Assembly: GCF_032444005.1 (NCBI RefSeq)
Contig: NC_091291.1
Location: forward strand, 22,692,001 to 22,756,000
Source of the DNA: Ranitomeya imitator
Lineage: Eukaryota
DNA: 64,000 nucleotides
Reading direction: 5' to 3'
Part shown: one piece after another, positions 1-63,134 of the stretch
How positions within the stretch are numbered: position 1 is the first letter of the stretch
Layout of the letters: each line of letters begins with the position of its first letter
The notes under the pieces: model-generated
Databases searched by the model: none
The model's input: the letters and a program-made list of their open reading frames with translations, nothing else
What the model was told of the DNA's origin: nothing
Made by a program: the position numbers and the translations under genes

Positions 1-158
1 TTTCACGGTCAGGACGTCTGCACTAATTCGCGCTCGTGTAGACAGATGGCTCCTCGCGTGAGCTCTACAGATAAAGATGGCAGCTCCGACATCCCCCCGG
101 GGGGGCAGTACTGGGCATTTACTAAGTGTTCACACCCCGGCATCGCTCCTCCTCTCAC

Positions 159-6935: not shown

Positions 6936-7094
6936 CGGCCGCGAATTGGCGCGGGATTTGAACCACGCTTCGCTAATTGGTCGCGCCCGGCCGAATCCTG
7001 TGTATTCAATGTATTATTCTAAAATCTCCATAAATAAACTACATATATATTCTAGAATACCCGATGCGTTAGAATCGGGCCACCATTAGATAGA

Positions 7095-14153: not shown

Positions 14154-16350
14154 CCTCAGCAAGGCACCTCCCTCCGGCGGACCCAGGCCTCAGCAAGAGC
14201 TCAACCTGGCAGACCCAGGCCTCAGCAAGGCCCTTCCCTCCGGCGGACCCAGGCCTCAGCAAGAGCCCAACCTGGCAGACCCAGGCCTCAGCAAGGCACC
14301 TCCCTCCGGCGGACCCAGGCCTCAGCAAGAGCCCAACCTGGCAGACCCAGGCCTCAGCAAGGCACCTCCCTCCCCCTCCGGCGGACCCAGGCCTCAGCAA
14401 GAGCCCAACCTGGCAGACCCAGGCCTCAGCAAGCCCCCCCCCCTCCCTCCGGCGAACCCAGGCCTCAGCAAGCCCCCCCCCCCCCCCCCCCTCCGGCGGA
14501 CCCAGGCCTCAGCAAGAGCCCAACCTGGCAGACCCAGGCCTCAGCAAGGGCCCCCCCCCCCCCCTGCCTCCGGCGAACCCAGGCCTCAGCAAGCCCCCCC
14601 CCCCCCCCCCCTCCGGCGAACCCAGGCCTCAGCAAGCCCCCCCCCCCCCCCCCTCCGGCGGACCCAGGCCTCAGCAAGAGCCCAACCTGGCAGACCCAGG
14701 CCTCAGCAAGGGCCCCCCCGGCAGACCCAGGCCTCAGCAAGGCCCCTCCCTCCGGCGGACCCAGGCCTCAGCAAGGGGCCCCCCCGGCAGACCCAGGCCT
14801 CAGCAAGGCCCCTCCCTCCGGCGGACCCAGGCCTCAGCAAGGGGCCCCCCCGGCAGACCCAGGCCTCAGCAAGGGGCCCCCCCGGCAGACCCAGGCCTCA
14901 GCAAGGGGCCCCCCCGGCAGACCCAGGCCTCAGCAAGGGGCCCCCCCGGCAGACCCAGGCCTCAGCAAGGGGCCCCCCCGGCAGACCCAGGCCTCAGCAA
15001 GGGGCCCCCCCGGCAGACCCAGGCCTCAGCAAGGGGCCCCCCCGGCAGACCCAGGCCTCAGCAAGGGGCCCCCCCGGCAGACCCAGGCCTCAGCAAGGGG
15101 CCCCCCCGGCAGACCCAGGCCTCAGCAAGGGGCCCCCCCGGCAGACCCAGGCCTCAGCAAGGGGCCCCCCCGGCAGACCCAGGCCTCAGCAAGGGGCCCC
15201 CCCGGCAGACCCAGGCCTCAGCAAGGGGCCCCCCCGGCAGACCCAGGCCTCAGCAAGGGGCCCCCCCGGCAGACCCAGGCCTCAGCAAGGGGCCCCCCCG
15301 GCAGACCCAGGCCTCAGCAAGGGGCCCCCAGGCAGACCCAGGCCTCAGCAAGGGCCCAACCCAGCGGACCCAGGCCTCAGCAAGGGGCCCCCCCGGCAGA
15401 CCCAGGCCTCAGCAAGGGGCCCCCCCGGCAGACCCAGGCCTCAGCAAGGGGCCCCCCCGGCAGACCCAGGCCTCAGCAAGGGGCCCCCCCGGCAGACCCA
15501 GGCCTCAGCAAGGGGCCCCCAGGCAGACCCAGGCCTCAGCAAGGGCCCAACCCAGCGGACCCAGGCCTCAGCAAGGGCCCAACCCAGTGGACCCAGGCCT
15601 CAGCAAGGGCCCAACCCAATGGACCCAGGCCTCAGCAAGGGCCCCCCCCGGCAGACCCAGGCCTCAGCAAGGGGCCCCCCCCGGCAGACCCAGGCCTCAG
15701 AAAGGGCCCAACCCAGCGGACGCAGGCCTCAGCAAGGGCCCAACCCAGTGGACCCAGGCCTCAGCAAGGGCCCAACCCAGCAGACCCAGGCCTCAGCAAG
15801 GGCCCAACCCAGCGGACCCAGGCCTCAGCAAGGGCCCAACCCAGCGGACCCAGGCCTCAGCAAGGGCCCAACCCAGTGGACCCAGGCCTCAGCAAGGGCC
15901 CAACCCAGTGGACCCAGGCCTCAGCAAGGGCCCAACCCGGCAGACCGAAGCCTAATCAAGAGCAGAACCCGGCAGACCAAGGCCTCAGCAAGAACCCAAC
16001 CCGGCAGACCCAGGCCTCAGCAAGGGCCCAACCCGGCAGACCGAGGCCTAATCAAGAGCAGAACCCGGCAGACCAAGGCCTCAGCAAGAACCCAACCCGG
16101 CAGACCCAGGCCTCAGCAAGGGCCCAACCCGGCAGACCGAGGCCTAATCAAGAGCAGAACCCGGCAGACCAAGGCCTCAGCAAGAACCCAACCCGGCAGA
16201 CCCAGGCCTCAGCAAGGGCCAAAGCCAGCAGACCCAGGCCTCAGTAAGGGCCGAAACCGGCGGACCCAGGCCTCAGCAAGGGCCGAAGCCGGCGGACCCA
16301 GGCCTCAGCAAGGGCCGAAGCCGGCGGACCCAGGCCTCAGCAAGGGCCGA
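14154..16350. repeat. C-rich minisatellite, about 32-bp unit cccccccggcagacccaggcctcagcaagggg, ETFB intron 1
   Basis: Direct periodicity; all three plus frames are open because the unit lacks stops. Confidence 0.97.
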
Positions 16351-16758
16351 AGCCAGCAGATAATTACAGTAGGGACAATTATTTCAAGTATTGGGGTCCC
16401 TGCGCCTCAAAACAGGTGCAGCACAGAATTAGGGGCAGGATGAGAACCAGTGGGGACGGAGCTGGAGAAGTGAAATGTGTCTGCACTACGGACTCTGCAG
16501 GAGAGCTGTGACCGGGAAGAAGTCACCATGGCGGACTGGGTCAGATGGAGAAGAGGTGAAAAGTGAAAACCCCAAACCTGGCTCCTCCCACTGGAGCCGC
16601 GCGGAGCTTGTCTGGGAACAAAGTAGGCCAGATCATAAAGCTGCAACTCTGAAGGCTCTGCTCACTTCCCCTTTAAGCAGCTCTACAATGTGAGGAGCCA
16701 TCCAACAGCTTCGGTATCCCAGCTTCCAAAACTGCTGCAAGTATACAGACGTGTCCAG

Positions 16759-19700
16759 CCGCTCCTCCTCCTGACAACCACACACCGCTCCCCTCCTCCT
16801 GACAACCACACACCGGTCCCTCCTCCTGACAACCACACACCGCTCCCCTCCTCCCCCTGACAACCACACACCGCTCCCCCCTCCTCCTGACAACCACACA
16901 CCGCTCCCCCCTCCTCCTGACAACCACACACCGCTCCCCCCTCCTCCTGACAACCACACACCGCTCCCCCCTCCTCCTGACAACCACACACCGCTCCCCC
17001 TCCTCCTGACAACCACACACCGCTCCCCCCTCCTCCTGACAACCACACACCGCTCCCTCCTCCTGACAACCACACACCGCTCCCCCTCCTCCTGACAACC
17101 ACACACCGCTCCCCTCCTCCTCCTGACAACCACACACCGCTCCCCCTCCTGACAACCACACACCGCTCCCCCCTCCCCCTCCTGACAACCACACACCGCT
17201 CCCCCTCCTCCTCCTCCTGACAACCACACACCGCTCCTCTCCCCCTCCTGACAACCACACACCGCTCCCCCCTCCTCCTCCTGACAACCAAACACCGCTC
17301 CCCCTCCTCCTCCTGACAACCACACACCGCTCCCCCCTCCTCCTCCTGACAACCACACACCGCTCCCCCTCCTCCTCCTGACAACCACACACCGCTCCCC
17401 CTCCTCCTGACAACCACACACCGCTCCCCCTCCTCCTCCTGACAACCACACACCGCTCCCCCCTCCTCCTCCTGACAACCACACACCGCTCCCCCCTCCT
17501 CCTCCTGACAACCACACACCGCTCCCCCCTCCTCCTCCTGACAACCACACACCGCTCCCCCCTCCTCCTGACAACCACACACCGCTCCCCCCTCCTCCTC
17601 CTGACAACCACACACCGCTCCCCTCCTCCTCCTGACAACCACACACCGCTCCCCCTCCTCCTGACAACCACACACCGCTCCCCCCTCCTCCTCCTGACAA
17701 CCACACACCGCTCCCTCCTCCTCCTCCTGACAACCACACACCGCTCCCTCCTCCTCCTGACAACCACACACCGCTCCCTCCTCCTCCTGACAACCACACC
17801 GCTCCCTCCTCCTCCTGACAACCACACAACGCTCCCCTCCTCCTCCTGACAACCACACACCGCTCCCCCTCCTCCTCCTGACAACCACACACCGCTCCCC
17901 CTCCTCCTCCTGACAACCACACACCGCTCCCCTCCTCCTCCTGACAACCACACACCGCTCCCCCTCCTCCTCCTGACAACCACACACCGCTCCCCCCTCC
18001 TCCTCCTGACAACCACACACCGCTCCCTCCTCCTCCTGACAACCACACACCGCTCCCCCCTCCTCCTGACAACCACACACCGCTCCCCCCTCCTCCTCCT
18101 GACAACCACACACCGCTCCCCTCCTCCTCCTGACAACCACACACCGCTCCCCCTCCTCCTGACAACCACACACCGCTCCCCCTCCTCCTCCTGACAACCA
18201 CACACCGCTCCCTCCTCCTCCTCCTGACAACCACACACCGCTCCCTCCTCCTCCTGACAACCACACACCGCTCCCTCCTCCTCCTGACAACCACACCGCT
18301 CCCTCCTCCTCCTGACAACCACACAACGCTCCCCTCCTCCTCCTGACAACCACACACCGCTCCCCCTCCTCCTCCTGACAACCACACACCGCTCCCCTCC
18401 TCCTCCTGACAACCACACACCGCTCCCCTCCTCCTCCTGACAACCACACACCGCTCCCCCTCCTCCTCCTGACAACCACACACCGCTCCCCCTCCTCCTC
18501 CTGACAACCACACACCGCTCCCCCTCCTCCTCCTGACAACCACACACCGCTCCTCTCCCCCTCCTGACAACCACACACCGCTCCCCTCCTCCTCCTGACA
18601 ACCACACACCGCTCCCCCTCCTCCTGACAACCACACACCACTCCCCCCTCCTCCTCCTGACAACCACACACCGCTCCCCTCCTCCTCCTGACAACCACAC
18701 ACCGCTCCCTCCTCCTCCTGACAACCACACACCGCTCCCCTCCTCCTCCTGACAACCACACACCGCTCCTCCTCCTCCCGACAACCGCTGCCCTTCTACT
18801 GACAACCACACACCGGTCCCTCCTCCTGACAACCACACACCGCTCCCCTCCTCCCCCTGACAACCACACACCGCTCCCCCCTCCTCCTGACAACCACACA
18901 CCGCTCCCCCCTCCTCCTGACAACCACACACCGCTCCCCCTCCTCCTGACAACCACACACAGCTCCCCCTCCTCCTGACAACCACACACCGCTCCCTCCT
19001 CCTCCTGACAACCACACACCGCTCCCCTCCTCCTCCTGACAACCACACACCGCTCCCTCCTCCTCCTGACAACCACACACCGCTCCCTCCTCCTCCTGAC
19101 AACCACACACCGCTCCCTCCTCCTCCTGACAACCACACACCGCTCCCTCCTCCTCCTGACAACCACACACCGCTCCCTCCTCCTCCTGACAACCACACAC
19201 CGCTCCCTCCTCCTCCTGACAACCACACACCGCTCCCTCCTCCTCCTGACAACCACACACCGCTCCCTCCTCCTCCTGACAACCACACACCGCTCCCCCT
19301 CCTGACAACCACACACCGCTCCCCTCCTCCTCCTGACAACCACACACCGCTCCCCTCCTCCTCCTGACAACCACACACCGCTCCCCCTCCTCCTGACAAC
19401 CACACACCGCTCCCCTCCTCCTCCTGACAACCACACACCGCTCCCCTCCTCCTCCTGACAACCACACACCGCTCCCCCTCCTCCTGACAACCACACACCG
19501 CTCCCCCCTCCTCCTGACAACCACACACCGCTCCAATCCTCCTCCTGACAACCACACACCGCTCCCCCTCCTCCTGACAACCACACACCGCTCCCCTCCT
19601 CCTCCTCCTGACAACCACACACCGCTCCCCTCCTCCTCCTCCTGACAACCACACACCGCTCCCCTCCTCCTCCTGACAACCACACACCGCTCCCCTCCTC

Positions 19701-19770
19701 CTCCTGACAACCACACACCGCTCCCCTCCTCCTCCTGACAACCACACACCGCTCCCCTCCTCCTCCCGAC
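16759..19770. repeat. C-rich minisatellite, 29-36-bp unit ctcctcctgacaaccacacaccgctcccc, ETFB intron 1
   Basis: Direct periodicity with variable (CCT)n; a variant block (caccggtccctcc...) occurs near both 16810 and 18830. Confidence 0.97.
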
Positions 19771-19859
19771 ACCAGAGTTGACATATTGTAATGACGGGGG
19801 CAGTTACCCTCTCCCCGGTGCCCGGCAGCCCTCCGCCTCCTGACCGCCGCACCTCTCAC

Positions 19860-19913
19860 CTTCACTGCATAGTCTATGACCCGCTTGACACCGACCAGGG
19901 CCCGCAGCGCCAT
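19860..19913 (-). CDS. ETFB: ETFB coding exon 1 (MALRALVGVKRVIDYAVK)
   Basis: ATG at 19913, 54 nt, donor gtgaga at 19859; matches ETFB N-terminus VKRVIDYAVK. Confidence 0.96.
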
Positions 19914-20821: not shown

Positions 20822-22113
20822 AGTGGCATCATCAGATCACTGACCGGATTAAATAGTGCTCCCGCCCAATCAAATTAAATTAAAATGCTTCGCGTCATCT
20901 GGCCGCCTCCTTATTGCGGCGCATGCTCCGACCGCCGCCAAGAGACCCGAGTCCTCCACGGCGTCATCAGGTAGCCCCGCCCACACGAACGCCCATCCAG
21001 GCGATCACCTGAGACGCCAGCGGACAACGCACAGCCAAGTGGCGAGGGGCGCGCACGCGCACAGAGGCAGGCCACACACGGAGCGATGCCACCATAATCA
21101 AGCAGGTAATAATTAACCCCAGATTCTAAATTTGACCCAAGCGTCACATATGAATAGCGGACAAGAGATGACAATACTAGAATCTCCCAACAATACACAC
21201 AAACATATACCAATTACTATAACAAGTGAAATTATACAATGTGAATATAAATATACAACACATTTAATAAGTGCAATGTATCAGAAATAATTAATATAAT
21301 ATCCTAAATATCAATATTCTAATATCATCCAAACAATAATCATACATTAAAAATTCATATATAATGAACATCATAACACATATATGGATATATAAAGTGC
21401 AAAACTACTGACAATATAATACTTTGAAAGTGAACCACATACATTTATGTACAACATGGTAGAAAACACCATACCAACACATATATATATATATATATAT
21501 TTTATAAAAAAAAATACAAATTAATTATAAAGTGCATATAGTAGGGAAATCTTCCATTTTCGTCCAGCTTCATTCACAGCTCGCAAAAAGTAAAAAAAAA
21601 AAAACACATGGCGGAGGCTGAAAAATAGCAGAAAATCATTAAAATCAATATAAAAACAATAAACGTTAAAATCCAATGAACCGCATATATATTAAAAAAA
21701 AGCAACCACATTAAAGAAAAGGTGCAAAGCTCAAAGTTTCGTTTAAACCGTCAGGTTTCAAGGTGCGGAGTTCCCAAATCCAACGGGATTCTTTTTGAGC
21801 CAAGGCTTTGCTCACATTACCCCCCCATGGATTCAGAGGGATGCAATCTATCCCCTTTACCCTCAAGCAAGAAGGATCAATGGCATGAAACTGTTTGAAG
21901 TGCCTCGGGACACTTTTTAATACCTCCAAATTATCTTCTTCTTTCCCAGCAAGGATATCCATCACGTGTTCTCTGATTCGTATCTTCAGGGCTCTTGTGG
22001 TCAACCCTACATAGATTTTAGTACACGTACAATACGCGTAGTAAACTACCGCAGTGGTAGTACACGTTATTGTTTGTGTAATTTTAAATTTTCGTCCATC
22101 CGAAGATACGAAT

Positions 22114-23850
22114 TGTCACGTCCGCTCGATCAGTCACGTCCGCACATACTTACCTGCCTTCTCCCATCCCTCGGCGCACTCCCGATCCTGTCCCTCGCCG
22201 CTCTGCCTCTTCTTTTGCTGGCTCACGGCGTCTGGTGTCTTTGCGCATGCGCGGTCGCGTCTCCTCCGTCGCTGAGCCTTCTGGGAGGTCGCAACCCGAT
22301 GGCTCCGCCCCAACATGGCGGCGCCCATCGGGTATTTCTTCCCGACGTCTTTCCAGGTAAGACGCCTTTGCTTTGTAGGTGCTCTGTCTGCTGTCAGCTT
22401 TCCTATGCCCTAGGCTCCCTAGTCTTAGTATCTCTTCCCTGCTTAGTTCTTTCTGTGTCTCTTCTCAGTGTTCCTGCCGTGTCCTGCCAAGTCCTGTGTT
22501 CCTGTCGTGTCCTGCCTAGTTCCGTGTTCCTGCCGTGTCCTGCCTAGTTCCGTGTTCCTGCCGTGTCCTGCCAAGTTCCGTGTTCCTGTCGTGTCCTGCC
22601 AAGTTCCGTGTTCCTGCCGTGTCCTGCCAAGTTCCGTGTTCCTGTCGTGTCCTGCCTAGTTCCGTGTTCCTGTCGTGTTCTGCCTAGTTCCGTGTTCCTG
22701 TCGTGTCCTGCCTAGTTCCGTGTTCCTGTCGTGTCCTGCCTAGTTCCGTGTTCCTGTCGTGTCCTGCCAAGTTCCGTGTTCCTGCCGTGTCCTGCCAAGT
22801 CCTGTGTTCCTGCCGTGTCCTGCCTAGTTCCGTGTTCCTGCCGTGTCCTGCCAAGTCCTGTGTTCCTGCCGTGTCTTGCCTAGTTCCGTGTTCCTGCCGT
22901 GTCCTGCCAAGTCCTGTGTTCCTGCCGTGTCCTGCCTAGTTCCGTGTTCCTGCCGTGTCCTGCCAAGTTCCGTGTTCCTGCCGTGTCCTGCCAAGTCCTG
23001 TGTTCCTGCCGTGTCCTGCCTAGTTCCGTGTTCCTGCCGTGTCCTGCCAAGTTCCGTGTTCCTGCCGTGTCCTGCCAAGTCCTGTGTTCCTGCCGTGTCC
23101 TGCCTAGTTCCGTGTTCCTGCCGTGTCCTGCCAAGTTCCGTGTTCCTGCCTAGTTCCGTGTTCCTGTCGTGTCCTGCCTAGTTCCGTGTTCCTGCTGTGT
23201 CCTGCCAAGTCCTGTGTTCCTGCCGTGTCCTGCCTAGTTCCGTGTTCCTGCCGTGTCCTGCCTAGTTCCGTGTTCCTGTCGTGTCCTGCCTAGTTCCGTG
23301 TTCCTGCTGTGTCCTGCCAAGTCCTGTGTTCCTGCCGTGTCCTGCCTAGTTCCGTGTTCCTGCCGTGTCCTGCCAAGTCCTGTGTTCCTGCCGTGTCCTG
23401 CCTAGTTCCGTGTTCCTGCCGTGTCCTGCCAAGTCCTGTGTTCCTGCCGTGTCCTGCCTAGTTCCGTGTTCCTGCCGTGTCCTGCCAAGTCCTGTGTTCC
23501 TGCCGTGTTCTGCCTAGTTCCGTGTTCCTGCCGTGTCCTGCCTAGTTCTGTGTTCCTGCCGTGTCCTGCCTAGTCCTGAGTTCCTGCCGTATCCTGCTTC
23601 GTCCCGTGTTCCTGCCGTATTCAGCTAAGTCCTGTATTCCTGTTGTTCCCCACCAGTCCTATAGCTCTGTGGTCTCTCTCTCTCTCTCGGGTCGTCCCTT
23701 TGGCTCTAGCTGTTGTGTCTCCATTCCCCCGAGGTCCTGCTCCTAACACTCCCTGTATAGGGGGTGGTTCCATCTGGTCCGCTCGACCCCGGGAGCTCTA
23801 GAGTCACGACCCAGAGGGTCCACTCTCGGATTCCTTTCCGAATCCTTACA
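22114..23850. mobile_element. Solo LTR nested in the Penelope ORF
   Basis: TGTCA...TTACA termini flanked by identical 5-bp TSD CGAAT (22109-22113 and 23851-23855); no coding capacity. Confidence 0.85.
22470..23640. repeat. 28-bp tandem repeat inside the solo LTR (gtgtcctgccaagttccgtgttcctgcc and variants)
   Basis: Direct periodicity. Confidence 0.95.
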
Positions 23851-26494
23851 CGAATTCAGTTGCTGTATCCACATTAGGGCACGCCACACACTTCCCACAT
23901 GGTTTACAACCCCATGGGGATCTTGGCTGTTGTTTTTGTGACCCAAATAATGGCCGTTCTTTTGGGACGTATAAACTCCTAACCAAAGTGTCCCTCAAGC
24001 TCTTTGATCTTCGCGCAGTGAGAGAGGGTTTCTGCGACAAATACTGTTTGAGCACTGGATCCGCCAATAAAACTGGCCAATGTTTTGCCACGCTATCAGA
24101 AAGTTTTCCCCCATTGGGAGTTATAGGTTGTCACCAACCTTACCTGATTAGTTGCAGTTTTTTTCCCCGACGAATAAAGAAGTTGATGGTGGTCCTTATT
24201 TCTAGCACGATTGTATGCTCTTTTTATACTTCTTCGACTGTAACCCCTCTCCAGGAATCTTGTCCTCATTTCCAGTGCACGTTTTTCAAAATCCTCCATA
24301 GTGGAGCAAATTCTTCTGATCCGCAGAAACTGGCCATATGGCACTGCATTGATTACATGAGACGGGTGAGAGGAGCTGGCATGTAAAACAGAATTGACCG
24401 CAGTATCCTTACAGAAGGCATCGGAGATTAACAGATCACTAGGGTCTCTTTTGACCAAAACATCAAGGAATTCAATCTGCTCATAACTGTATTTATATGT
24501 TAAATGAATGTTATACTCATTATTATTCAAAGTCTGAAAAAAAGTTTGAAGCTCAGACGATGTACCACGCCAGATCAGAAATATGTCATCGATGTAGCGG
24601 GTCCAAAAAATGACCCGCTCCATTGATGTACCCTGATCTGACGCGAATAGATCCCTCTCCCACAGCCCCAGGAACACATTTGCATACGAGGGCGCACAAG
24701 CCGCCCCCATCGCGGTGCCCTGGAGTTGTAGGTAGAGGGATCCATTAAAAATAAAAAAAAGTTATGAGTCAGAAGAAATTGTAGGAGGCTTACCAAAAAC
24801 TCGATTTCCTCCCTTGAAAAATTGGTCATAGTCAAAAAATTAGAGACCGCCCTCAAGCCATCATGGTGCCGGATGTTTGTATATAGCGACTCCACGTCGC
24901 AAGTCACTAGAAGCATATCCTCATCAATATGCACTGAGTCTATTTTTTTTCAAAAAATCAGACGTGTCCCGAGTGAATGAGGGAATGGCTTCCACCAATG
25001 GCTTGAGGAACATGTCTATGTATCTCCCGATGCCTTCCGTAAGGCTGCCTATCCCGGAAATGATGGGCCTTCCCGGAGGATTTTTCTGATTTTTATGCAC
25101 CTTTGGCAATAAATACAATACCAACAGATTATCCCTTACCTCCACAGTAATAATTACCCTCTCCTCCGCCCTCCATAGAATTTTTCGAAGCTCCTCTTTA
25201 TATGAGACAAGAGGATTGAACGTTAATTTTTTGTAACAAATAGAATCTCTCAACATTCTATATGCCTCTGTCTCATATAAACTCGTTGGTCAGATTACAA
25301 CATTTCCACCTTTGTCCGCAGGTTTTATTAAAATGTCCTTGAGGTTACTCGGAACCTTTATAGCTTGATGTTCTTTTTTTTGTCAAGTTATCCTGCCAGA
25401 CTATTGGTGGAATCCCTTCAAGCTCTTTTGTCACTAGTTGAATAAAAATATCCACATTTGGACATAGGGACAAAGGAGGAAATTTTTTTGGATTTCGGGC
25501 GGAGTGAGGGTGGTATCTTACCCAAAGATGGATTGACATGTTCTTCTGCCAGCTCCTCCAAATCCCTCAATGTAGCTTGTTCCTCAGGTAAAGGGAAATA
25601 ACTTTTGAATCTCTTCACTATGGTGCCACTTTTTAAGCCATAGCGATGTCCCGAACACATGCAGGTCCTTAATCACTGTAAAGGTGTCAAGCCGCGTGCT
25701 AGGGGAAAAGGTTAGACCCTTAGATAAAACAGAAAAGTTCTTCATTACTGAGTTCATAATTCGATAAGTTAATTACCTTTAGGGCATCATTTCTGGAGTT
25801 GGAGGTCTGCGGGCGTGTATTAGAATCCGATTTTTGTTCTTTTTTTTCCTTTTATTATTCCCAAATCTTGTTTGAATGGAGTATTGGGTTCCGTCAGATC
25901 TCCCTCCAGACGATGCCAAAGATGACACCGAAGAAGTTCTCCTAATATGACTCCCGGAACTTTTCCTTCTCCATCTATACACTGTGCCATTAGTGTTGGT
26001 TGCTGCACTGGTATCCGCACCATCAAAGACCGAAGCAGCTTGTTACCTGCCAGGTCGTGTCTCGATTTCTATAATCCATTGTTTGTCAACAACAACTCTG
26101 CGAAAATACACAGCAAAACACAATTTACCAATAAGGACAAACAAAACACAGGTGAAATACAAAAATTAACCCCTGTGCCCCCCGTCAGGAGATATTAAAG
26201 CCGTAACGGTCTCGTACAAGCAAATATATAAACCTATAAAAAAAAATGTACAAGTCAGGCCTCAAAGTACAAAACAAAATACCAAAATTGCCTTATCGCC
26301 TGTCGTTTCGTCTTCATCGCCGTATCTCAAATAAAATGTTCACCTCAGCAAAACTTTTTTTGAACTGGATGAGTGCAGTGATTTCGTTTCATTTCAAGTA
26401 TTGATGGGACCATTGTCTCCGTTCACTTGCACCATCAAACTCTACAAACAGTCGAGTGCTAGCTTTTCGTTCTCTCTACTATATTGTATAATGC

Positions 26495-27435
26495 ACCCCC
26501 ATAGGCAGACTCTATAATATAATGCAGCACCCATAGGCAGACTCTATAGTATAATGCAGCACCCATAGGCAGACTCTATAGTATAATGCACCCCATAGGC
26601 AAACACTATAGTATAATGCAGCACCCATAGGCAGACTCTATAGTATAATGCACCCCCATAGGCAGACTCTATAGTATAATGCAGCACCCATAGGCAGACT
26701 CTATAGTATAATGCAGCACCCATAGGCAGACTCTATAGTATAATGCACCCCATAGGCAAACACTATAGTATAATGCAGCACCCATAGGCAGACTCTATAG
26801 TATAATGCACCCCCATAGGCAGACTCTATAGTATAATGCAGCACCCATAGGCAGACTCTATAGTATAATGCAGCACCCATAGGCAGACTCTATAGTATAA
26901 TGCACCCGCATAGGCAGACTCTATAGTATAATGCAGCACCCATAGGCAGACTCTATAGTATAATGCAGCACCCATAGGCAGACTCTATAGTATAATGCAC
27001 CCCATAGGCAAACACTATAGTATAATGCACCCCCCATAGGCAGACTCTATAGTATAATGCACCCCCATAGGCAGACTCTATAGTATAATGCAGCACCCAT
27101 AGGCAGACTCTATACTATAATGCACCCCTATAGGCAGACTCTATAGTATAATGCACCCCCATAGGCAGACTCTATTGTATAATGCACCCCCATAGGCAGA
27201 CTCTATAGTATAATGCAGCACCCATAGGCAGACTCTATACTATAATGCACCCCTATAGGCAGACTCTACTGTATAATGCACCCCCATGGGCAGACTCTAT
27301 AGTATAATGCACCCCCATAGGCAGACTCTATAGTATAATGCGCCCCCCATAGGCAGACTCTATAATATAATGCACCCGCATAGGCAGACTCTATAGTATA
27401 ATGCACCCCCCCCATAGGCAGACTCTATAGTATAA
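26495..27435. repeat. About 30-31-bp minisatellite ataatgcagcacccataggcagactctatagt
   Basis: Direct periodicity. Confidence 0.95.
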
Positions 27436-28317
27436 TACAGCCTCGTAAAAACAATAAATATTCACCTCTCTTCCTCCTGGTTCCTCTGCTGCTCTGAGCG
27501 CCTGCACATCTCCAGACAGCAGGCGCCGAGTAGTGACGTCATGGTAACCCCTGTTGGTGTCGGCTTCGGTGACATCAGATGCTGAGAGGGGGATGATGTG
27601 AGAGGGAGTGTAATGCTGTTGAACCTGCAATAACAGGTGGGAGGCCCCGCCTGCTCAGGGGCCCCATAGCGGCAGGGTGGTAGAGCAGGGAGATCATGTC
27701 TCCTTGTTTTGTCGCAGTGCAACTGATGTGCGCGCCGATACAGTACAGTAGCATAGCTCTGGATGGGCCCCCTCCGAGCTCGGGGCCCGGGGCGACCGGT
27801 ATATACGCTACAGGAAGAAGGTAAAGGCCCCTAATTATGGGGCGCAATTACTTTTCCGATGGATTTTTGTAAAGACCCCTAACTATGGGGGGGGGGCAAT
27901 TATTTTTCCAATGGGTTTTTATGGCAGACAGAGCAGGAATATTCCACATTGCAAGCAATGGCGCCTTTATGATCACTCTGGGAGCAAGACGACACAATAG
28001 GAAGCAAGAACTGACCCATAAGAAGAATTAACCCCTTGAATTAAAAAAAAAAATCTAAAGAAGAGAGGTTTAAAAAAAAAAAAAAGTTAAAAATTATAAA
28101 TGGCGCCATTGCACTATGTGTCCACTAGGTGTCGCCACTTCATACACATTTCTTACACTATATACCTCTAGCGTCAGGATACAGATGATTTGTAAATGAG
28201 AAAACTGCAGAGAAGGGAAGTCCTTCTTATGGACCATTAGATTACCTGGATTTTATGTTTTGGATTCAGGGTGCAAAAAGTTGTGATTATAGGACAACCC
28301 CCTTTAAAATATTAACT

Positions 28318-28477
28318 TGGAACAATGACTCTGCCCACTAGGGGGCGCAAAAGTAAAAAAAAAAACAACTTTTATTCCTCCATAGACTTTTAGGCCTTCA
28401 TCAAGTCCATAAGTGTATGGCGTCATTATTATTCTTTTTTACTTTTGCGCCCCCTGGTGGGCATTGTCATCATTCCA
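28318..28477. mobile_element. Small palindromic MITE-like element with CTCF-like motifs in both arms
   Basis: About 43-bp imperfect inverted repeats (28318-28360 and 28435-28477) containing CCACTAGGGGGCGC and its complement GCGCCCCCTGGTGG. Confidence 0.65.
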
Positions 28478-28666
28478 TGTTGTAGATATTTTCTTTGTTT
28501 TCTTTTTTTTTTAACCCTTTTAAAATTGGTTGCCTGAGATCTCTTTAACCAAACCCGTGTGCATGACCCCAGCCCTGGTAATAATATATAATGACTCCGT
28601 AGATAATAACAGGTAACGACTCAGTCTTATTTTTTATTGGTCGCAGTTTTTTTCATGGTGGTCTTT

Positions 28667-29279
28667 TCAGTAGGCGAAACGCCTGGGTGCCCGCCTCACC
28701 CGTATAGGGTAACGCCTTGGCACTTCTTCAGGGTAGGTTGACATCCTTGGTATTTTCGCAGGTCTGGCCTTTGAAAGGGCCATCATAGAAGACTTCTGGT
28801 CATGCGTGGTCGACCCTGAGCTTGTGGTCGCCTCTGGTGGTGACTGTGGTTGAGGCATAGACCTTTGCGGCATGTCCTTAGCGTCCGTTTTTCCCGGCTT
28901 GGCCTCCTTACTGACAGTCTCCTCTGGTCGTGGAGATTTCAGGAGTGGCATTAGGACATTGTCTGTGGCCACCATTGGATGTGGAACAGTTTCCGGGGAT
29001 CTTGGGGCAGCATCCATTGAGTTTGGGCGGGGCGCGATCAGAGGTGATGCGGTGTCCGCCGGGGGTGGGAAGACTCTTTGTGGGACGCTTTCTAGTAATC
29101 TTCGAACATTGGTGGCGGCCATTGAGTAGTGATACATTTTTTTCGGATCGTCATTTAGTTCCCTCGGTGCATTGGTGCTGCCCGCTGTGCTCGGAGGAGC
29201 GACGCGCGCTGTGCTCGGAGGAGCGACGCGCGCTGTGGTCTCGGATTCGGCATCTTGATGTACATCCTTTTTAGGAAAT
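28667..29279 (-). CDS. Candidate orphan gene, exon 2 (Pro/Ser/Thr-rich, ends RRYPIRVRRAPRRFAY*)
   Basis: Acceptor ttttgcttacatttcag at 29280; frame open for 204 codons from acceptor to stop, with an in-frame TAA just upstream in the intron; in-frame 24-nt duplication; AATAAA at 28638-28633. Confidence 0.6.
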
Positions 29280-29460
29280 CTGAAATGTAAGCAAAATTAT
29301 TAATACGCAAAAAAAAAAAAAACAACAACAACACAACCATCCCCCTAAAACCTCAGGCTCATAATAATATGGAAACCTGAAAATAATACATTTTCAGGAC
29401 TGGAAGTATTAATAAATTGCTGCCACCTACAGGCGAAATAATATGAAAATGTAACTTCAC

Positions 29461-29468
29461 CCGTGCAT
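29461..29468 (-). CDS. Candidate orphan gene, exon 1 coding part (ATG CAC GG)
   Basis: gcgatcATG context (A at -3); phase-2 donor GG|gtgaag at 29460 matches the phase-2 acceptor at 29280, giving a 181-nt intron. The donor is weak. Confidence 0.45.
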
Positions 29469-30384
29469 GATCGCGGCGCTGTGGTCAGTCCTGTGTTCGG
29501 TCAGTGGTCAGGTCCGGATATGTGAAGCATAGAACTTCTGGCTGTTCAATAAGAAGAGTTCTTAGTGATGTCATCATTCCTATTATGATGTCATCATTCC
29601 TATTATGATGTCATCATCCCCCTGCACTGCAGGGAATCTCCCTATGAGTCAATGCTAATTATTTCACCTTGGGCCCCTTGCTGTCAATTTTCCTCGTTTC
29701 TCCAGGGACCAATTTAATTTATTTTCCACTCTCGTTATTGCATAAAAGGCGATTCCTTCTCACAGATTTCAGTAGCAGAGAACAAAGACAAAGTTTGTTT
29801 TTACAAAAAGTTTTCAAAAAGTTCAAAACATTAAATAAAGTTTTCACAACTTTCTAAAAGTTTTAAACTTTTATGTTGACAATGCAATAAAAACTTAATT
29901 TTAAGGAATTAAAGGGCGAAATTGAAGAATAAAAGACGAATAACAAAGATTTTAATTTTTTTAGAACAGTGGAACTTTTTAGCCGTACGTACACAGTTTT
30001 ATAGAAGAAATTGGGGTGACATTGACCCCCCCCCGTCCGTGCTGCCTGCCTGTTCTAGCGGAAAAAGAAAACTAAAACAACATTTAAAAAAAAAGTTATT
30101 CAAAAAGTTTTAATAGATTTTTGCTTTAACTTGCACATTTTGGAATAATTAATACAAGTCCTGTCGGGACTGCCGCACTTTACCTGCATTCACAGGTACT
30201 AAGAAAAAGCAGAAATAAAAATCCCCAAATTTCTAAAATCCTAAAATAAGCAATGTCCCTCCACAGATAAACTAAGAATTTGGGAACTGGTTGATGAAAT
30301 CACGACAAGTTGGATTTCAGTCCGTCCTCTGGTTCCTGGCAGCCATTTGTCTTCTTATTGTATACAGCGATCTGGTGGATTGTA

Positions 30385-32185
30385 TACAGCACCGCACAAA
30401 AATTTGGACACCCCTGTTCATGTTCATGCAGGGATTCTCCTTTTTTGGAATGTGCTCATTGCGGGTTCAGGCAGAAGGCAGCAAAACACAGGAAAACAAG
30501 GAGAAAAGAAACATGTGAAACAAACCAGATTATTCTGCTGGATTTACAGCAGCACTACTCAGTACATTTGGATTCACAGCTACTATACTGAATACTGCTG
30601 TATTTACAGCTACAATACTGAGTACTGCTGTATTCACAGCTACACTACTCCATGCTGCTAGATTCCCAGCAGCATTACTCAGCACTGCTGGATTCCCATC
30701 TACACTGCTCAGTACCGCTAGATTCACAGCTAGACTACTCAGTACGCTGGATTCACAGCTACACTACTCAGTACTTCTAGATTCACAGCTACACTATTCA
30801 GTATTGCTGGATTCACACCTAAGCTACTCAGTACTGCTAGATTCACAGCTACATTACTCAATATTGCTGGATTCCCATCTATACTACTCAGTACTGCTCG
30901 ATTCAGAGCTACACTACTTAGTATTCATGGATTCACACCAAGACTACTCAGTACTGCTAGATTCACAGCTACACTACTCAGTACTGCTGGATTCCCATCT
31001 ATACTACTCAGTGCTGCTGGATTCAGAGCTACACTACTCAGTACTGCTGGATTCACACCAAGACTACTCAATACTGCTGGATTCACAGCTACACTACTCA
31101 GTACTGCTGGATTCAGAGCTACACTACTGAGTACTGCTGGATTCACACCAAGACTACTTAGTACTGCTGGATTCACAGCTACACTATGCAGTACTGCTGG
31201 ATTCAGAGCTACACTACCCAGTACAGCTGGATTCACATCAAGACTACTCAGTACTGCTGGATTCACAACTACACTACTTAGTACTGCTAGATTCACAGCT
31301 ACTTTACTCAGTACTGCTGGATACACAGTTACACTACTCAGTGTTACCCCTCAGATTCCTCCCATTTTACCCTGATGACCACTTTACATCCCCTTGGCTT
31401 CTCTCAAACAACTTATTTAGGTTGTCGCCTGGTATGACTTCTAACAGTCTTTAAGGAGTTCTCAGAGATGCTGAGCTCTGTGTCCAACTCATCCCAAACC
31501 ATCACCATAGTTTACAGGTCAAGTGATTGTGGAGGCCATAGAATCTGATGCATCCTCCATCCCTCTCATTCTGGGTCACATCGCCCTGACATAGCCCGAC
31601 TGGTCTCCTCTGGACAGTTGATGTTGAGATGTTTCTGTTACTTGATGTCTTTACATCATTTATCTGAAGTGCTGTCAATTTGTGCTTTCTGAGGCTGGCA
31701 ACTCTGATGAACCTATCCTCTGCAGCAGAGGTCATTTTTAGGTTTCCTTTCCTCATGACAGCCAGTTTCATCACATATATTGATGGTTTTCATTACTGCA
31801 CTTCAGGTTACCTTCAAGATTCGAGCAATTTTCTGGATTGACTGACCTTGATGTTTAAAAGTAATAATGGACTGTTGTTTACGATTACATGAGGCATACC
31901 TGATTATTGGAAGCCATTCCAGCTGATGACTTAATGACGTTGCTGGAGAGAATGCTAGGGGGGTGTAAAGCCACCATCATAGTGACAGGGGAAATACATG
32001 AGATATCTAAGGTGTAATACAAATTCCGGTTTGTTTCTCACATTTTTCTTTACTCCCCTGCTTCCATATCTATGTGTTCCTTCCTTCGTGGTTTCGCTGC
32101 CTTCAGTCTGACTTTGCAATGTGCACTTGCCACTAAGAACAAGGAAATGATTGAATGGACAGGGGTGTTCAAACTTTTGCAGTTA
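30385..32185 (-). mobile_element. Old Tc1-like transposon relic with internal satellite
   Basis: Transposase fragment TSAAEDRFIRVASLR...ISTSTVQRR (31502-31774); partial inverted termini aaaatttggacacccctg (about 30398-30416) and caggggtgttcaaactttt (32160-32178). Confidence 0.6.
30530..31345. repeat. 30-bp tandem repeat ggattcacagctacactactcagtactgct
   Basis: Direct periodicity; same family at 32670-32745, 33040-33245 and, degenerate, 34690-35430. Confidence 0.93.
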
Positions 32186-33031: not shown

Positions 33032-33468
33032 ACATATTTTCAGCTACACTACTCAGTACTGCTGGATTCACATTTACACTACTCAGTACTGCTGGATTCA
33101 GAGCTACACTACTCAGGACTACTGGATTCAGAGCTCCACTACTCACTATTGCTGGATTTACAGCTACACTACTCAGTATTGCTGGATTTACAGCTACACT
33201 ACTCAGCACTGCTGGATTCACAGCTACACTTCTCAGTACTGCTGTATAAAGTCTGCATCTCTGGATATGACTTTAGTATAAGTCTGGAAAGGATTCTCAA
33301 AATTACAGGATATGCGATAAGCGTCTCACCCCCCCCCAGGAAGAATTGGGGTCCCTGAGACCACATCTGTCCCATCTTGATATTTCACCCCACCACCTAA
33401 ATACTTGTCACATGTTCTTACATGGATTTTTTTGTGTTTTTTTGATGGGGAAGGGACAGCAGACCAAC

Positions 33469-33597
33469 CTGAAATTATGAGGAGCACATTGGCTGTCCAG
33501 CACAGGTAGAAGGACCACTGGTAATTACAAGAACTGTTGAGGACTGAATAAGACGTCTCAGCCGTGTAAACGGACATCCCGACAAGAAGAAACATGG
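33469..33597 (-). CDS. NKG7: NKG7-like gene, exon 3 (AMFLLVGMSVYTAE...QWSFYLCWTANVLLIIS)
   Basis: 129 nt, phase 1/1; ttttgcag acceptor, gttggt donor; family motifs VYT and WSFYLxW. Confidence 0.85.
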
Positions 33598-34003
33598 CTG
33601 CAAAATATAAGGGCACAGAATAAACCACAAGGACCCCGAGAGTTGCATTCATTATTCAATTGGCTGAATGCAAAACCCTATTCTTTTTTTTTTTTTACCT
33701 GGAACAGCGCCACCTGTTAAGTTGTGGCTGTGTCTGGTATTGCAGCTCATTTTTTTTTTTCACTTGGGACTGTGCTGCCATACCAGAAAAAGCCACAACC
33801 AATGGAGAAATCTTGAAAAGGCTCTTTAATATACAAGTTTTATAAAATTACCTCCCCATCCCTAGTAGTGTAAGGTCTTTTTTCCCTTCTCCATAAGTTT
33901 GGGTCTTCTGCTTCCAGGTGGTGCTGTGATACAATAATGCAGCGCCATCTCATGTTGGAAAACATATCGAGCCTGATGAAGATGTTAGGACTCTTGTGCT
34001 CAC

Positions 34004-41359: not shown

Positions 41360-41770
41360 ACATTGCTTCTAAAGGTGTAACAAAAAGTCACGCAATGGAT
41401 AGAAATGGATAGAGCTTGTAGAGACGAGCACTCTTGCAATCTACTGCTTAATAAAATTTGCAGCCATTCTTGAGATATTAACACTTTTCTTTTTTCTTTT
41501 TTTTTTTTTTACAGCTCGTCGCTTTGGAGACCGACCACCGTAAGCTGTAGCGATCCTGGCCAGTTGCAAAACAGCGCTAACAGACGCAACAGAAAAAGGG
41601 CTTGTAAGCGCTGCTGCGGTGGTCGGTCTCCAAGGCAACGAGCTGTAAACAAAATTTAAAAAGTGTTAATATCTCAGGAACGGCTGCAACTTTTAAGAAG
41701 CAGTAAATTGCAAAAGTGCTCGTCTTTACAAGCTCTGACAGCATCCATATATCAAGATGAGAGTAACCCT
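41360..41770. mobile_element. T2-type MITE, same family as 1714-2025
   Basis: Long internal inverted arms (gagatattaacactt...acagctcgtcgctttggagaccgaccacc and complement). Confidence 0.65.
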
Positions 41771-44700
41771 TATCCTATAACAGGGAAGACCAAAGAACCC
41801 CCATAACAGAGATGGCCAAAGGGTCTCCATAACAGGGATGGCCAAAGGGCCCCCATAACAGGGATGGCCAAAGGGCCCCCATAACAGGGATGTCCAAAGG
41901 ACCTCCATAACAGAGATGGCCAAAGGACCCCCATAACAGAGATGGCCAAAGGACCCCCATAACAGGGATGGCCAAAGGACCCCCATAACAGAGCTGGCCA
42001 AAGGACCCCCATAACAGAGCTGGCTAAAGGACCCCTATAACAGAGATAGCAAAAGAACCCCCATAACAGGGATGGCCAAAGGACCCCCATAACAGAAATG
42101 GCCAAAGGACCCCCATAACAGAGCTGGCCAAAGGACCCCCATAACAGATGGCCAAAGGGCCCCCATAACAGAGATGGCCAAAGGGCCCCCATAACAGAGA
42201 TGGCCAAAGGGCCCCCATAACAGAGATGGCCAAAGGGCCCCCATAACAGAAATGGCCAAAGGACCCCCATAACAGGGATGGCCAAAGGACCCCCATGATA
42301 GAAAGGGCCCCCATAACAGAGATGGCCAAATGGCCCCCATAACAGAGCTGGCTAAAGGGCCCCCATATCAGAGATGGCTAAAGGACCCCCATAACAGAGA
42401 TGACCAAAGGACCCCCATGACAGAGATGGCTAAAGGACCCCCATAACAGAGATGGCTAAAGGGCCCCCATAACAGAGATGGCCAAAGGGCCCCCATAACA
42501 GAGATGGCCAAAGGGCCCCCATAACAGAGATGGCCAAAGGACCCCATAACAGAGCTGGCCAAAGGACCCCCATAACAGGGATGGCCAAAGGACCCCCATA
42601 ACAGAGATGGCCAAAGGACCCCATAACAGGGATGGCCAAAGGGCCCCCCATAACAGAGATGACCAAAGGGCCCCAATAACAGAGATGGCCAACGGGCCCC
42701 CATAACAGAGATAGCCACAGGCTAAAGGGCCCCCATAACAGAGATGGCCAAAGGGCCCCATAACAGGGATGGCCAAAGGACCCCCATAACAGAGATAGCA
42801 AAAGGACCCCCCATCACAGAGATGGCCAAAGGACCCCCATAACAGAGATGGCCAAAGGACCCCCATAAAGGGGCTGGCTAAAGGGGCCCCATAACAGAGA
42901 TGGCCAAAAGGCCCCCATAACAGAGATGGCCAAAGGACCCCATAACAGGGATGGCCAAAGGACCCCCATGACAGAGCTGGCTAAAGGGCTCTCATAACAG
43001 AGATGGCCAAAGGGCCCCAATAACAGAGATGGCCAAAGGGCCCCCATAACCGAGATGGCCACAGGCTAAAGGGCCCCCATAACAGAGATGGCTAAAGGGC
43101 CCCCATAACAGAGATGGCAAAAGGACCCCCCATAACAGAGATGGCCAAAGGACCCCCATAACAGAGATGGCTAACGGACCCCCATAACAGAGCTGGCTAA
43201 AGAGCCCCCATAACAGAGATGGCCAAAGGACCCCCATAACAGATGGCTAAAGGGCCCCCATAACAGAGATGGCCAAAGTGCCCCATAACAGGGATGGCCA
43301 AAGGGCCCCCCATAACAGAGATGGCCAAAGGGCCCCAATAACAGAGATGGCCAACGGGCCCCCATAACAGAGATGGCCACAGGCTAAAGGGCCCCCATAA
43401 CAGAGATGGCCAAAGGGCCCCATAACAGGGATGGCCAAAGGACCCCCATAACAGAGATAGCAAAAGGACCCCCCATAACAGAGATGGCCAAAGGACCCAC
43501 ATAACAGAGATGGCCAAAGGACCCCCATGACAGAGCTGGCTAAAGGGCTCTCATAACAGAGATGGCCAAAGGGCCCCAATAACAGAGATGGCCAAAGGGC
43601 CCCCATAACCGAGATGGCCACAGGCTAAAGGGCCCCCATAACAGAGATGGCTAAAGGGCCCCCATAACAGAGATGGCAAAAGGACCCCCCATAACAGAGA
43701 TGGCCAAAGGACCCCCATAACAGAGATGGCTAACGGACCCCCATAACAGAGCTGGCTAAAGAGCCCCCATAACAGAGATGGCCAAAGGACCCCCATAACA
43801 GATGGCTAAAGGGCCCCCATAACAGAGATGGCCAAAGTGCCCCATAACAGGGATGGCCAAAGGGCCCCCCATAACAGAGATGGCCAAAGGGCCCCAATAA
43901 CAGAGATGGCCAACGGGCCCCCATAACAGAGATGGCCACAGGCTAAAGGGCCCCCATAACAGAGATGGCCAAAGGGCCCCATAACAGGGATGGCCAAAGG
44001 ACCCCCATAACAGAGATAGCAAAAGGACCCCCCATAACAGAGATGGCCAAAGGACCCCCATAACAGAGATGGCCAAAGGACCCCCATAACAGAGCTGGCT
44101 AAAGGGGCCCCATAACAGAGATGGCCAAAAGGCCCCCATAACAGAGATGGCCAAAGGACCCCATAACAGGGATGGCCAAAGGACCCACATAACAGAGATG
44201 GCCAAAGGACCCCCATGACAGAGCTGGCTAAAGGGCTCTCATAACAGATGGCCAAAGGGCCCCAATAACAGAGATGACCAAAGGGCCCCCATAACAGAGA
44301 TGGCCACAGGCTAAAGGGCCCCCATAACAGAGATAGCTAAAGGGCCCCCATAACAGAGATGGCAAAAGGACCCCCCATAACAGAGATGGCCAAAGGACCC
44401 CCATAACAGAGATGGCCAAAGGACCCCCATAACAGAGCTGGCTAAAGGGGCCCCATAACAGAGATGGCCAAAGGGCCCCATAACAGAGATGGCCAAAAGG
44501 CCCCCATAACAGAGATGGCCAAAGGACCCCCATAACAGAGATGGCCAAAGGACCCCCATAACAGAGATGGCTAACGGACCCCCATAACAGAGCTGGCTAA
44601 AGAGCCCCCATAACAGAGATGGCCAAAGGACCCCCATAACAGATGGCTAAAGGGCCCCCATAACAGAGATGGCCAAAGGGCCCCCATAACAGAGATGGCT

Positions 44701-63060: not shown

Positions 63061-63134
63061 GTTAGGTGGTACCCTGTCCCCAGATAACATTCTTGTTGAC
63101 AGTTTTATGTTCTTTGCTCTTTCGCAGCCCTTCG

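What the first reader, a model, noticed from the sequence alone, without database searches (positions are those of the whole stretch)
28633..29468. Hidden two-exon orphan gene (206 aa, Pro/Ser/Thr-rich, Arg-rich tail) between ETFB and the NKG7-like gene
Seen: the 156-aa track ORF is only the 3' part of a frame that stays open for 47 more codons up to a strong acceptor (29280) and closes just inside the intron. An ATG-CAC-GG|GT 181 nt upstream supplies the required phase 2. A 24-nt duplication (ARVAPPST x2) keeps the frame, and AATAAA follows about 30 nt after the stop. The product is MHGFPKKDVHQDAESETT...RRYPIRVRRAPRRFAY. Knowledge: I recognise no family; RRxxRxRxxPxR(F/Y) tails occur at Gypsy pol C-termini and in basic nuclear-targeting or chromatin-binding segments, and human has CLDND2 in this slot as recalled. 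Inference: a lineage-specific, disordered, possibly nuclear or germline protein, perhaps from a retroelement fragment.
Basis: partly seen in the sequence, partly recalled or inferred. Interest (0 to 1): 0.75.

Follow-up and report, generated by a model that had tools for sequence, protein, structure and literature searches.

The report
Fast-evolving disordered frog gene, conserved tail
The hidden reading frame is very probably a real gene, because tree frog and toad proteins share its layout and an almost identical arginine-rich last 16 residues; it is therefore not an orphan, and its first exon and its function remain unproven.

Summary
The frame length alone is weak evidence: it gives p about 0.005 per region, or roughly 0.3 such frames per window.

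An exhaustive HMMER search found two relatives. They are RefSeq models from Hyla sarda ('mucin-2-like', 234 aa) and Bufo gargarizans ('extensin-like', 299 aa). Both align colinearly to the very C-terminus, where a basic tail (RRYPIRVRRAPRRFAY, then stop) is 10-11 of 16 identical. Similarity survives composition shuffles (z 13-16). It also extends upstream of the first in-frame ATG, so an upstream start exon is needed.

So this is a real, fast-evolving, disordered, basic protein gene of hyloid frogs. It is not an orphan, and no sign of retroelement origin was found.

The proposed splice is not confirmed:
- cDNA-type contigs from two studies cover only the big exon.
- One contig runs unspliced across the acceptor.
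- No junction was seen.
- One template-switch adaptor points to a plus-sense RNA.

Function is inferred only. The tail is probably a nuclear-targeting or chromatin/nucleic-acid-binding motif. Interest is modest.

The parts
28667..29279 (-). Main coding exon: 203 codons plus one phase base and the TGA stop. It encodes nearly the whole protein.
   Evidence: Translation. Colinear homology to P0001 and P0002. tblastn places P0002 residues 61-299 in one HSP at 29224-28670. cDNA-type contigs cover 28683-29302 only.
28670..28717 (-). Conserved C-terminal tail RRYPIRVRRAPRRFAY, directly followed by the stop.
   Evidence: Alignment A1: 10/16 identical to Hyla and 11/16 to Bufo, and all three end on Tyr then stop. 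Tail-only shuffle z 9.2-9.4. Highest pLDDT of the model, 67-74.
29183..29237 (-). In-frame 24-nt tandem duplication (ARVAPPST x2), specific to this species among the three sequences.
   Evidence: TRF: 2.3 copies, 100% match. Contigs of X1, X4 and X5 span it without differences.
29280..29460 (-). Proposed 181-nt intron (gt...cag) with a long pyrimidine tract. Splicing is not confirmed.
   Evidence: Sequence. X5 contig 21 runs 29208-29302 and 24 letters further, unspliced across 29279/29280. No joint was reported.
29461..29468 (-). Proposed coding part of exon 1 (ATG CAC GG), with A at -3. Unverified.
   Evidence: No contig covers it. The N-terminal length of the model matches the Hyla protein within one residue.
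28633..28638 (-). AATAAA polyadenylation signal, 28 nt after the stop.
   Evidence: Sequence. Not covered by any contig.
29303..29345 (.). T-rich tract on the minus strand (pyrimidine tract of the proposed intron), which reads as an A14-containing tract on the plus strand. RNA-type coverage ends here.
   Evidence: This is the likely oligo-dT internal priming site if the plus-sense reading of the adaptor is right (inference).
29566..29651 (.). Promoter-like cluster 100-185 nt upstream of the proposed ATG: a 20-nt unit x2.6 carrying TGATGTCATCA (a CRE-like palindrome), plus one TGACTCA (AP-1 type) at 29645-29651. Speculative.
   Evidence: TRF and sequence. The motif identities come from general knowledge. 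There is no test, and the copies arise from one duplication.

Best explanation
This is a genuine protein-coding gene on the minus strand, between ETFB and a PMP22/claudin-family (NKG7/CLDND2-like) gene of a poison frog. One large exon (28667-29279) encodes almost the whole protein, which is about 200 aa, basic (pI 10) and Pro/Ser/Thr/Ala-rich. It is intrinsically disordered and has no signal peptide or membrane segment.

It belongs to a small, fast-evolving family so far seen only in hyloid frogs: Dendrobatidae here, Hyla sarda XP_056398859.1, and Bufo gargarizans XP_044134634.1. The shared layout, from N- to C-terminus, is:
1. A short N-terminus.
2. A variable number of degenerate 'T-N-x-x-R-x-L-E-x-V-P-Q' units.
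3. A KEAK...PG segment.
4. A Ser/Thr/Pro linker.
5. 'RPAKIP'.
6. An invariant-length basic tail R-Y-P-[ILV]-R-[VK]-R-[RK]-A-P-x-R-[FL]-x-Y, followed by the stop.

Because homology runs upstream of the first in-frame ATG (29137), translation must start in an upstream exon.

Inferred mechanism (not shown): the body is a rapidly diverging flexible spacer. Function sits in the constrained tail, which most likely acts as a classical basic nuclear-localisation signal and/or an arginine-anchored nucleic-acid or nucleosome-binding motif.

The confidence given is for the composite statement. A real conserved coding gene is about 0.85, the exact exon 1 about 0.45, and the tail function about 0.35.
For: Homology:
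- phmmer against 1.84 billion representatives gave exactly two hits, E 2e-5 and 3e-4. Both end at the C-terminus of query and hit.
- Alignment A1 shows the co-terminal tail and 43 invariant columns.
- Shuffle controls: full-length z 15.9 and 12.7. The body without the last 20 residues gives z 10.7 and 8.5. The 46 residues upstream of M47 against Bufo give z 6.3, with 0 of 1000 shuffles reaching the observed score.

Frame and copy number:
- The frame is kept open over about 190 aligned residues despite only 34-41% identity.
- tblastn finds one copy in the window, colinear in one exon.
- Run variants keep the frame: no gaps and no stops, with 5 replacement and 2 silent codon changes.

Expression:
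- RNA-type contigs of two studies are confined to the exon within a 3-kb stretch.

Protein properties:
- No Pfam, PDB, Atlas or Rfam match.
- AF2 gives pLDDT 52.8 and no secondary structure.
- There is no hydrophobic segment, and pI is 10.

Start exon:
- The N-terminal length of the 206-aa model puts the first 'ATN' unit at residues 58-60, against 59-61 in Hyla.
Against: - No splice junction was seen. One cDNA contig crosses the acceptor unspliced.
- A Smart-seq template-switch adaptor sits before 28784 in plus orientation, and coverage stops at a plus-strand A14 tract. Both fit a plus-sense (antisense) RNA primed internally rather than the minus-sense mRNA (inference).
- The 3' UTR and exon 1 are not covered.
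- The donor of exon 1 is weak.
- Variants are not biased to third codon positions, though there are only 8 sites.
- Only two relatives exist. Both are automatic gene models, and their genomic neighbourhood could not be checked.
- The tail function rests on resemblance only.
Confidence: 0.65

Rival explanations
1. Same gene, different structure. The transcript is unspliced here and starts near the T-rich tract (about 29303-29345). Translation starts at ATG 29137 and gives the 156-aa protein. The open 46 codons upstream would be a decaying repeat unit that now lies in the 5' UTR.
For: - Contig X5-21 is colinear with the genome across the acceptor and the in-frame TAA.
- No contig lies beyond the T tract or on exon 1, and there is no joint.
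- ATG 29137 has A at -3.
- The N-terminus of Bufo P0002 lies 14 residues before a 'TNTSRGLESVPQRAY' unit, which resembles the unit right after M47 (55% over 18 aa).
Against: - Homology to Bufo extends upstream of M47 (z 6.3), and the frame there is open.
- The 24-nt duplication preserves the frame.
- Hyla has about 58 residues before the equivalent unit, which matches the spliced model.
- The unspliced contig may belong to a plus-sense RNA.
Confidence: 0.2
2. It is not a functional gene in this species. It would be a chance or relic open frame inside a non-coding, possibly plus-sense, transcript. The similarity to the Hyla and Bufo models would reflect low-complexity composition or a decaying pseudogene.
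For: - The ORF length alone is expected about 0.3 times per window.
- The adaptor orientation and the A-tract suggest plus-sense RNA.
- Replacement:silent changes are 5:2 among run variants.
- The protein is not annotated in the collection searched.
Against: - Similarity survives composition-preserving shuffles, with z up to 16, including the non-repetitive tail.
- All three proteins stop right after the same Tyr.
- There is no frameshift or stop in 203 codons, nor in two other individuals' contigs.
Confidence: 0.07
3. It is a fragment of an LTR retroelement or another mobile element, with the basic tail derived from a pol C-terminus.
For: Only the recalled resemblance of R-x-R...P-x-R-[FY] tails to segments of retroelement polyproteins. 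The window is rich in repeats, with a Penelope-like RT remnant about 4 kb away.
Against: - No RT, RNase H, integrase, gag or chromodomain match, even at E 10.
- No long direct or inverted repeats bracket it.
- A single locus in the window.
- One contig path per run over the ORF, whereas the true repeat at 27645-27695 draws up to six contigs per run, including from another species.
- Only one annotated relative per other frog.
Confidence: 0.04

Closest known systems
XP_056398859.1 'mucin-2-like' (Hyla sarda) and XP_044134634.1 'extensin-like isoform X1' (Bufo gargarizans): uncharacterised RefSeq gene models
   Same: - Colinear similarity over about 190 residues.
- The same composition (45% P+S+T+A), basic pI and no hydrophobic segment.
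- The same repeat unit.
- The same 16-residue tail ending at the stop.
   Different: - Identity is only 34-41%.
- The number of repeat units differs, giving 203+3, 234 and 299 aa.
- This species has its own 24-nt duplication.
- The names given by the pipeline reflect composition only. There is no signal peptide, no Cys-rich mucin domain and no SPPPP extensin motif.
- Synteny is unknown.
Arginine-anchor nucleosome acidic-patch binders (CENP-C motif, HMGN/Dsup core, LANA)
   Same: A short basic motif in a disordered protein. It has R-x-R, and an aromatic residue 8 positions after the first Arg, as for R8/R10/Y16 of the CENP-C motif peptide (PMC10606924).
   Different: - No Trp follows the aromatic residue, and there is no RRS core.
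- No sequence search links them.
- Binding is untested. This is a resemblance, not membership.
C19ORF84 (SPOCD1-DNMT3L adaptor of the nuclear piRNA pathway)
   Same: A small, compact gene for a largely disordered protein in the same chromosomal neighbourhood in human. C19orf84 lies at chr19:51.388 Mb on the minus strand. The nearness to LIM2/NKG7/ETFB is from memory. It is reported absent from frogs on the basis of annotation names (PMC7618676).
   Different: - No reference sequence could be compared.
- The slot differs (between ETFB and the claudin-like gene, not beyond LIM2).
- DNMT3L is scored absent in frogs, and SPOCD1 absent in Bufo, which removes its known partners.

Membership tests
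Hyloid-frog 'RYPxRxRRAPxR[LF]xY-tail' family (P0001, P0002) | Significant full-length sequence similarity that is not explained by composition. | tested here: met
   phmmer E 2e-5 and 3e-4 in 1.84 billion proteins. Shuffle z 15.9 and 12.7, and body-only z 10.7 and 8.5.
Hyloid-frog 'RYPxRxRRAPxR[LF]xY-tail' family (P0001, P0002) | A 16-residue basic tail ending on Tyr immediately before the stop. | tested here: met
   Alignment A1. Tail z 9.2-9.4.
Hyloid-frog 'RYPxRxRRAPxR[LF]xY-tail' family (P0001, P0002) | Orthologous position (next to ETFB) and the same exon structure. | not testable with these tools
LTR retroelement (Gypsy/copia) polyprotein fragment | RT, RNase H, integrase, gag or chromodomain similarity. 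| tested here: not met
   Pfam at E up to 10 gave only MUCL1, at 0.093 and below its cut-off. There was none for P0001 or P0002.
LTR retroelement (Gypsy/copia) polyprotein fragment | Flanking LTRs and many dispersed copies. | tested here: inconclusive
   No bracketing repeats, a single copy in the window and a single contig path per run. Genome-wide copy number was not testable.
Mucin / extensin (names given to the relatives) | A signal peptide and secreted architecture, Cys-rich or vWD domains (mucin), or SPPPP repeats (extensin). | tested here: not met
   Maximum 19-residue hydropathy is 0.45. There are no Cys residues and no Pfam domains. No SPPPP is present in the translation.
CENP-C / HMGN-type acidic-patch motif | An R-R-S-x-R core or an R...Y-W signature, and binding to the nucleosome. 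| tested here: inconclusive
   By eye, R-x-R and an aromatic at +8 are present, but the RRS core and the Trp are absent. Binding is not testable here.
C19ORF84 | Sequence or profile similarity to axolotl, turtle or mammalian C19ORF84. | not testable with these tools

The most novel reading that the evidence does not exclude
The family could be the 'missing' anuran counterpart of C19ORF84. That gene is a small disordered germline adaptor in the ETFB-NKG7-LIM2 neighbourhood, and a 2025 survey scored it absent from frogs by annotation name. In that case the conserved basic tail would be its chromatin- or partner-binding end. Frogs would then have kept more of the nuclear piRNA-methylation pathway than reported.
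Probability: 0.05. Interest if true: 0.7.

Novelty: new member of a known kind. Interest (0 to 1): 0.3.

Why it matters
It adds an unannotated gene to this poison-frog locus. It also shows that two misleadingly named RefSeq models ('mucin-2-like', 'extensin-like') form one frog-restricted family, whose only strongly constrained part is a 16-residue arginine-rich C-terminal motif. Such families are typical raw material for studying how disordered, fast-evolving proteins keep a short functional anchor. If the tail proves to be a chromatin tether or a germline factor, the interest would rise. As it stands, this is an ordinary lineage-restricted gene of unknown function.

Tried and rejected
- **Word-index protein searches:** exon 2 alone gave nothing. 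The 3-sequence profile gave self hits only, with candidates saturated by low-complexity words. The C-terminal 110 aa of the Bufo protein gave a self hit only.
- **ESM Atlas:** no usable hit for the whole protein or the tail.
- **Pfam, PDB, Rfam:** Pfam found nothing above cut-off. For PDB, the profile search found nothing and the tail alone drew only non-significant hits, E 0.2-0.3, to designed reDPBB proteins. Rfam found nothing.
- **Earlier scan findings:** nothing by place, sequence or words.
- **Joined model:** the joined 206-aa spliced model was never sent to any search or fold. Only exon 2 was used, by reference.
- **Complex prediction:** not used, because no frog or vertebrate partner sequence was available.
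- **C19ORF84 comparison:** no sequence was obtainable and Zoch 2024 is not held. No human sequence was used.
- **Rejected reading, secreted mucin:** there is no signal peptide and no Cys.
- **Rejected reading, TSO mis-priming:** mis-priming on the minus-sense mRNA at the CCC at 28777-28779 would leave CCAT between the adaptor and 28784, and that is not observed.

Full report
**Observation.** On the minus strand the 156-aa ORF (28667-29137) lies in a frame that stays open for 46 more codons. The open stretch ends at a cag| acceptor whose last base is 29280, and the frame closes at TAA 29299-29297. ATG CAC GG|gtgaag lies at 29468-29459, which gives a 181-nt intron in phase 2. An exact 24-nt tandem (29183-29237; ARVAPPST twice) keeps the frame. 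AATAAA (28638-28633) follows the stop by 28 nt. The description is therefore accurate.

The frame by itself is weak evidence. Only 0.45% of dinucleotide shuffles of the 841-nt region reach 203 open codons. Spread over a 64-kb window, that is about 0.3 expected, and thousands in a frog genome.

**Context.** The window comes from a poison frog, according to notes of this scan. The region 9-476(-) carries an ETF-domain exon. The regions 33326-33652(-) and 63066-63344(+) carry PMP22/claudin-family exons. Much of the window is satellite-like tandem array.

**Relatives.** Pfam gave nothing and the word-index search gave nothing. The claim 'orphan' rests on absence of relatives, so I spent the exhaustive HMMER search on exon 2, by reference. 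It returned two proteins: P0001 (E 2e-5) and P0002 (E 3e-4). Both alignments run to the last residue of query and hit.

- P0001 is XP_056398859.1, 'mucin-2-like', from Hyla sarda (234 aa).
- P0002 is XP_044134634.1, 'extensin-like isoform X1', from Bufo gargarizans (299 aa).

In alignment A1 the tails read as follows, each followed by the stop:

| Species | Tail |
|---|---|
| This frog | RRYPIRVRRAPRRFAY |
| Hyla sarda | RRYPLRKRKAPKRLSY |
| Bufo gargarizans | GRYPVRVRRAPERLCY |

The proteins are compositionally biased, so I shuffled the query 1000 times for each comparison:

| Comparison | z vs P0001 (Hyla) | z vs P0002 (Bufo) |
|---|---|---|
| Full length | 15.9 | 12.7 |
| Without the last 20 residues | 10.7 | 8.5 |
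| Tail alone | 9.4 | 9.2 |
| The 46 residues upstream of M47 | -0.6 | 6.3 |

The upstream match to Bufo pairs 'TNAPRELNDDPK' with 'NNAPRELENAPK'. tblastn puts Bufo residues 61-299 in a single HSP at 29224-28670 and finds no second copy in the window.

A frame kept over about 190 aligned residues at 34-41% identity, in three frog families, ending at the same residue, is the signature of a coding gene. It does not fit a chance ORF. The gene is therefore not an orphan in the strict sense. The relatives' names are composition artefacts: none of the three has a hydrophobic segment, pI is 10-10.7, and 45% of residues are P, S, T or A.

**Protein.** No Pfam, PDB or Atlas match was found. AlphaFold2 on A1 gives mean pLDDT 52.8 and pTM 0.11 with no secondary structure. 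Confidence is highest (67-74) over residues 170-200. The layout runs as follows:
1. A short N-terminus.
2. Three degenerate 'T-N..R.LE.VPQ' units here, and more in Bufo.
3. A KEAK..PG segment.
4. An S/T/P linker.
5. RPAKIP.
6. The basic tail.

**Transcripts.** Within 27500-30500, runs X4 and X5 (one 2025 study) cover only 28683-29302. Run X1 (another study) covers only 29100-29236. A real repeat at 27645-27695 attracts many contigs from all runs, including another species. The locus is therefore transcribed and behaves as single-copy.

The proposed splice is not supported, for these reasons:
- There is no joint and no loose end at 29279.
- X5 contig 21 runs 29208-29302 and 24 letters further. 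That takes it across the acceptor and the in-frame TAA.
- Nothing lies on 29346-29519, which includes exon 1.
- Nothing lies on the 3' UTR.

X5 contig 18 carries GGTATCAACGCAGAGTACATGGG before 28784 in plus orientation. From my own knowledge, this is the 3' part of the Smart-seq template-switch oligo, which marks the 5' end of the copied RNA. Coverage also ends at a plus-strand A14 tract (29309-29322). Together these fit an internally oligo-dT-primed plus-sense RNA better than the minus-sense mRNA.

I considered TSO mis-priming on the minus-sense RNA and rejected it, because the expected CCAT is missing. The plus-sense reading rests on one adaptor in one contig, and contig ends are unreliable. 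It neither proves antisense transcription nor disproves the gene. A long plus-sense precursor is also unlikely, because a comparable A14 tract at 28072-28085 has no coverage upstream of it.

The eight differences between the runs and the window keep the frame. They make 5 replacement and 2 silent codon changes. That fits fast evolution but carries little weight.

**Start of the gene.** There is no in-frame ATG between the TAA and 29137, yet homology extends upstream. An upstream start exon is therefore required.
- The 206-aa model puts the first 'ATN' unit at residues 58-60, against 59-61 in Hyla. Hyla's 'MFRNF-FGEKQ' also lines up with 'MHG-FPKKD'. This is mild support.
- I put the exact exon 1 at roughly even odds.
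- The alternative, an unspliced mRNA starting at M47, gets 0.2.

The joined 206-aa sequence was not searched or folded.

**Retroelement idea.** No mobile-element domain was found, and no bracketing repeats. A 50-nt inverted-repeat, MITE-like element lies downstream at 28314-28481 but outside the gene. Dfam and Repbase are not available here.

**Mechanism (inferred).** Constraint is concentrated in the tail, while the body diverges and changes repeat number. The simplest reading is a disordered nuclear protein whose tail is a classical basic NLS (RVRRAPRR; RKRKAPKR in Hyla). The tail may also be an arginine-anchored nucleic-acid or nucleosome binder.

The CENP-C motif peptide uses anchor R8, R10 and Y16/W17 (PMC10606924). 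The frog tail has R-x-R and an aromatic residue at +8, but no Trp and no RRS core. This is a lead only.

**A further untested lead.** Human C19orf84 lies at chr19:51.388 Mb on the minus strand. By my recollection that is close to LIM2, NKG7, CLDND2 and ETFB. It encodes a small disordered germline adaptor, and it is scored absent in Rana, Bufo and Xenopus by annotation name (PMC7618676). A diverged orthologue would look much like this gene.

Against this lead, DNMT3L (in all the frogs scored) and SPOCD1 (in Bufo) are also scored absent, and the slot differs. No reference sequence could be obtained. I give it about 5%.

**Verdict.** It is a new member of an uncharacterised hyloid-frog family. 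The first exon is unconfirmed, a retroelement origin is unsupported, and function is inferred only.

Noticed in passing
window 28314-28481: A 50-nt inverted repeat (86% complementary, 68 nt apart) lies just downstream of the gene's poly(A) signal. It looks like a small MITE-type insertion.
   Followed up: no
window 29566-29651: A 20-nt unit repeated 2.6 times carries the palindrome TGATGTCATCA (CRE-like). One TGACTCA (AP-1 type) site lies 100-185 nt upstream of the proposed start codon. This is a possible promoter element, or just a microduplication.
   Followed up: no
window 21711-25256 (minus): ORFs with reverse-transcriptase-like (…RYIDDIFLIW…) and GIY-YIG-like stretches suggest a Penelope-like retroelement remnant between ETFB and this gene. 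Pfam gave no hit at E 0.01 for the two pieces tried.
   Followed up: partly
window 3458-7089, 14081-16443, 16633-19913, 26478-27436, 30535-31342, 41726-45785, 48439-50132, 52657-54650: Very long satellite-like tandem arrays give ORFs of hundreds to over 1000 codons in several frames. They surround the ETFB first exon (MALRALVGVKRVIDYAVKV at about 19913, minus) and inflate any ORF list for this window.
   Followed up: no
window 27645-27695: A short dispersed repeat is present in many contigs of all four runs laid, including the other species (organism B). It served as an internal contrast to the single-path coverage of the ORF.
   Followed up: partly
window 28784 and 29303-29326 (plus strand): A Smart-seq template-switch adaptor sits at 28784, and coverage ends at a genomic A14 tract. 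This is a possible local antisense RNA over the coding exon, or an internal-priming artefact.
   Followed up: partly
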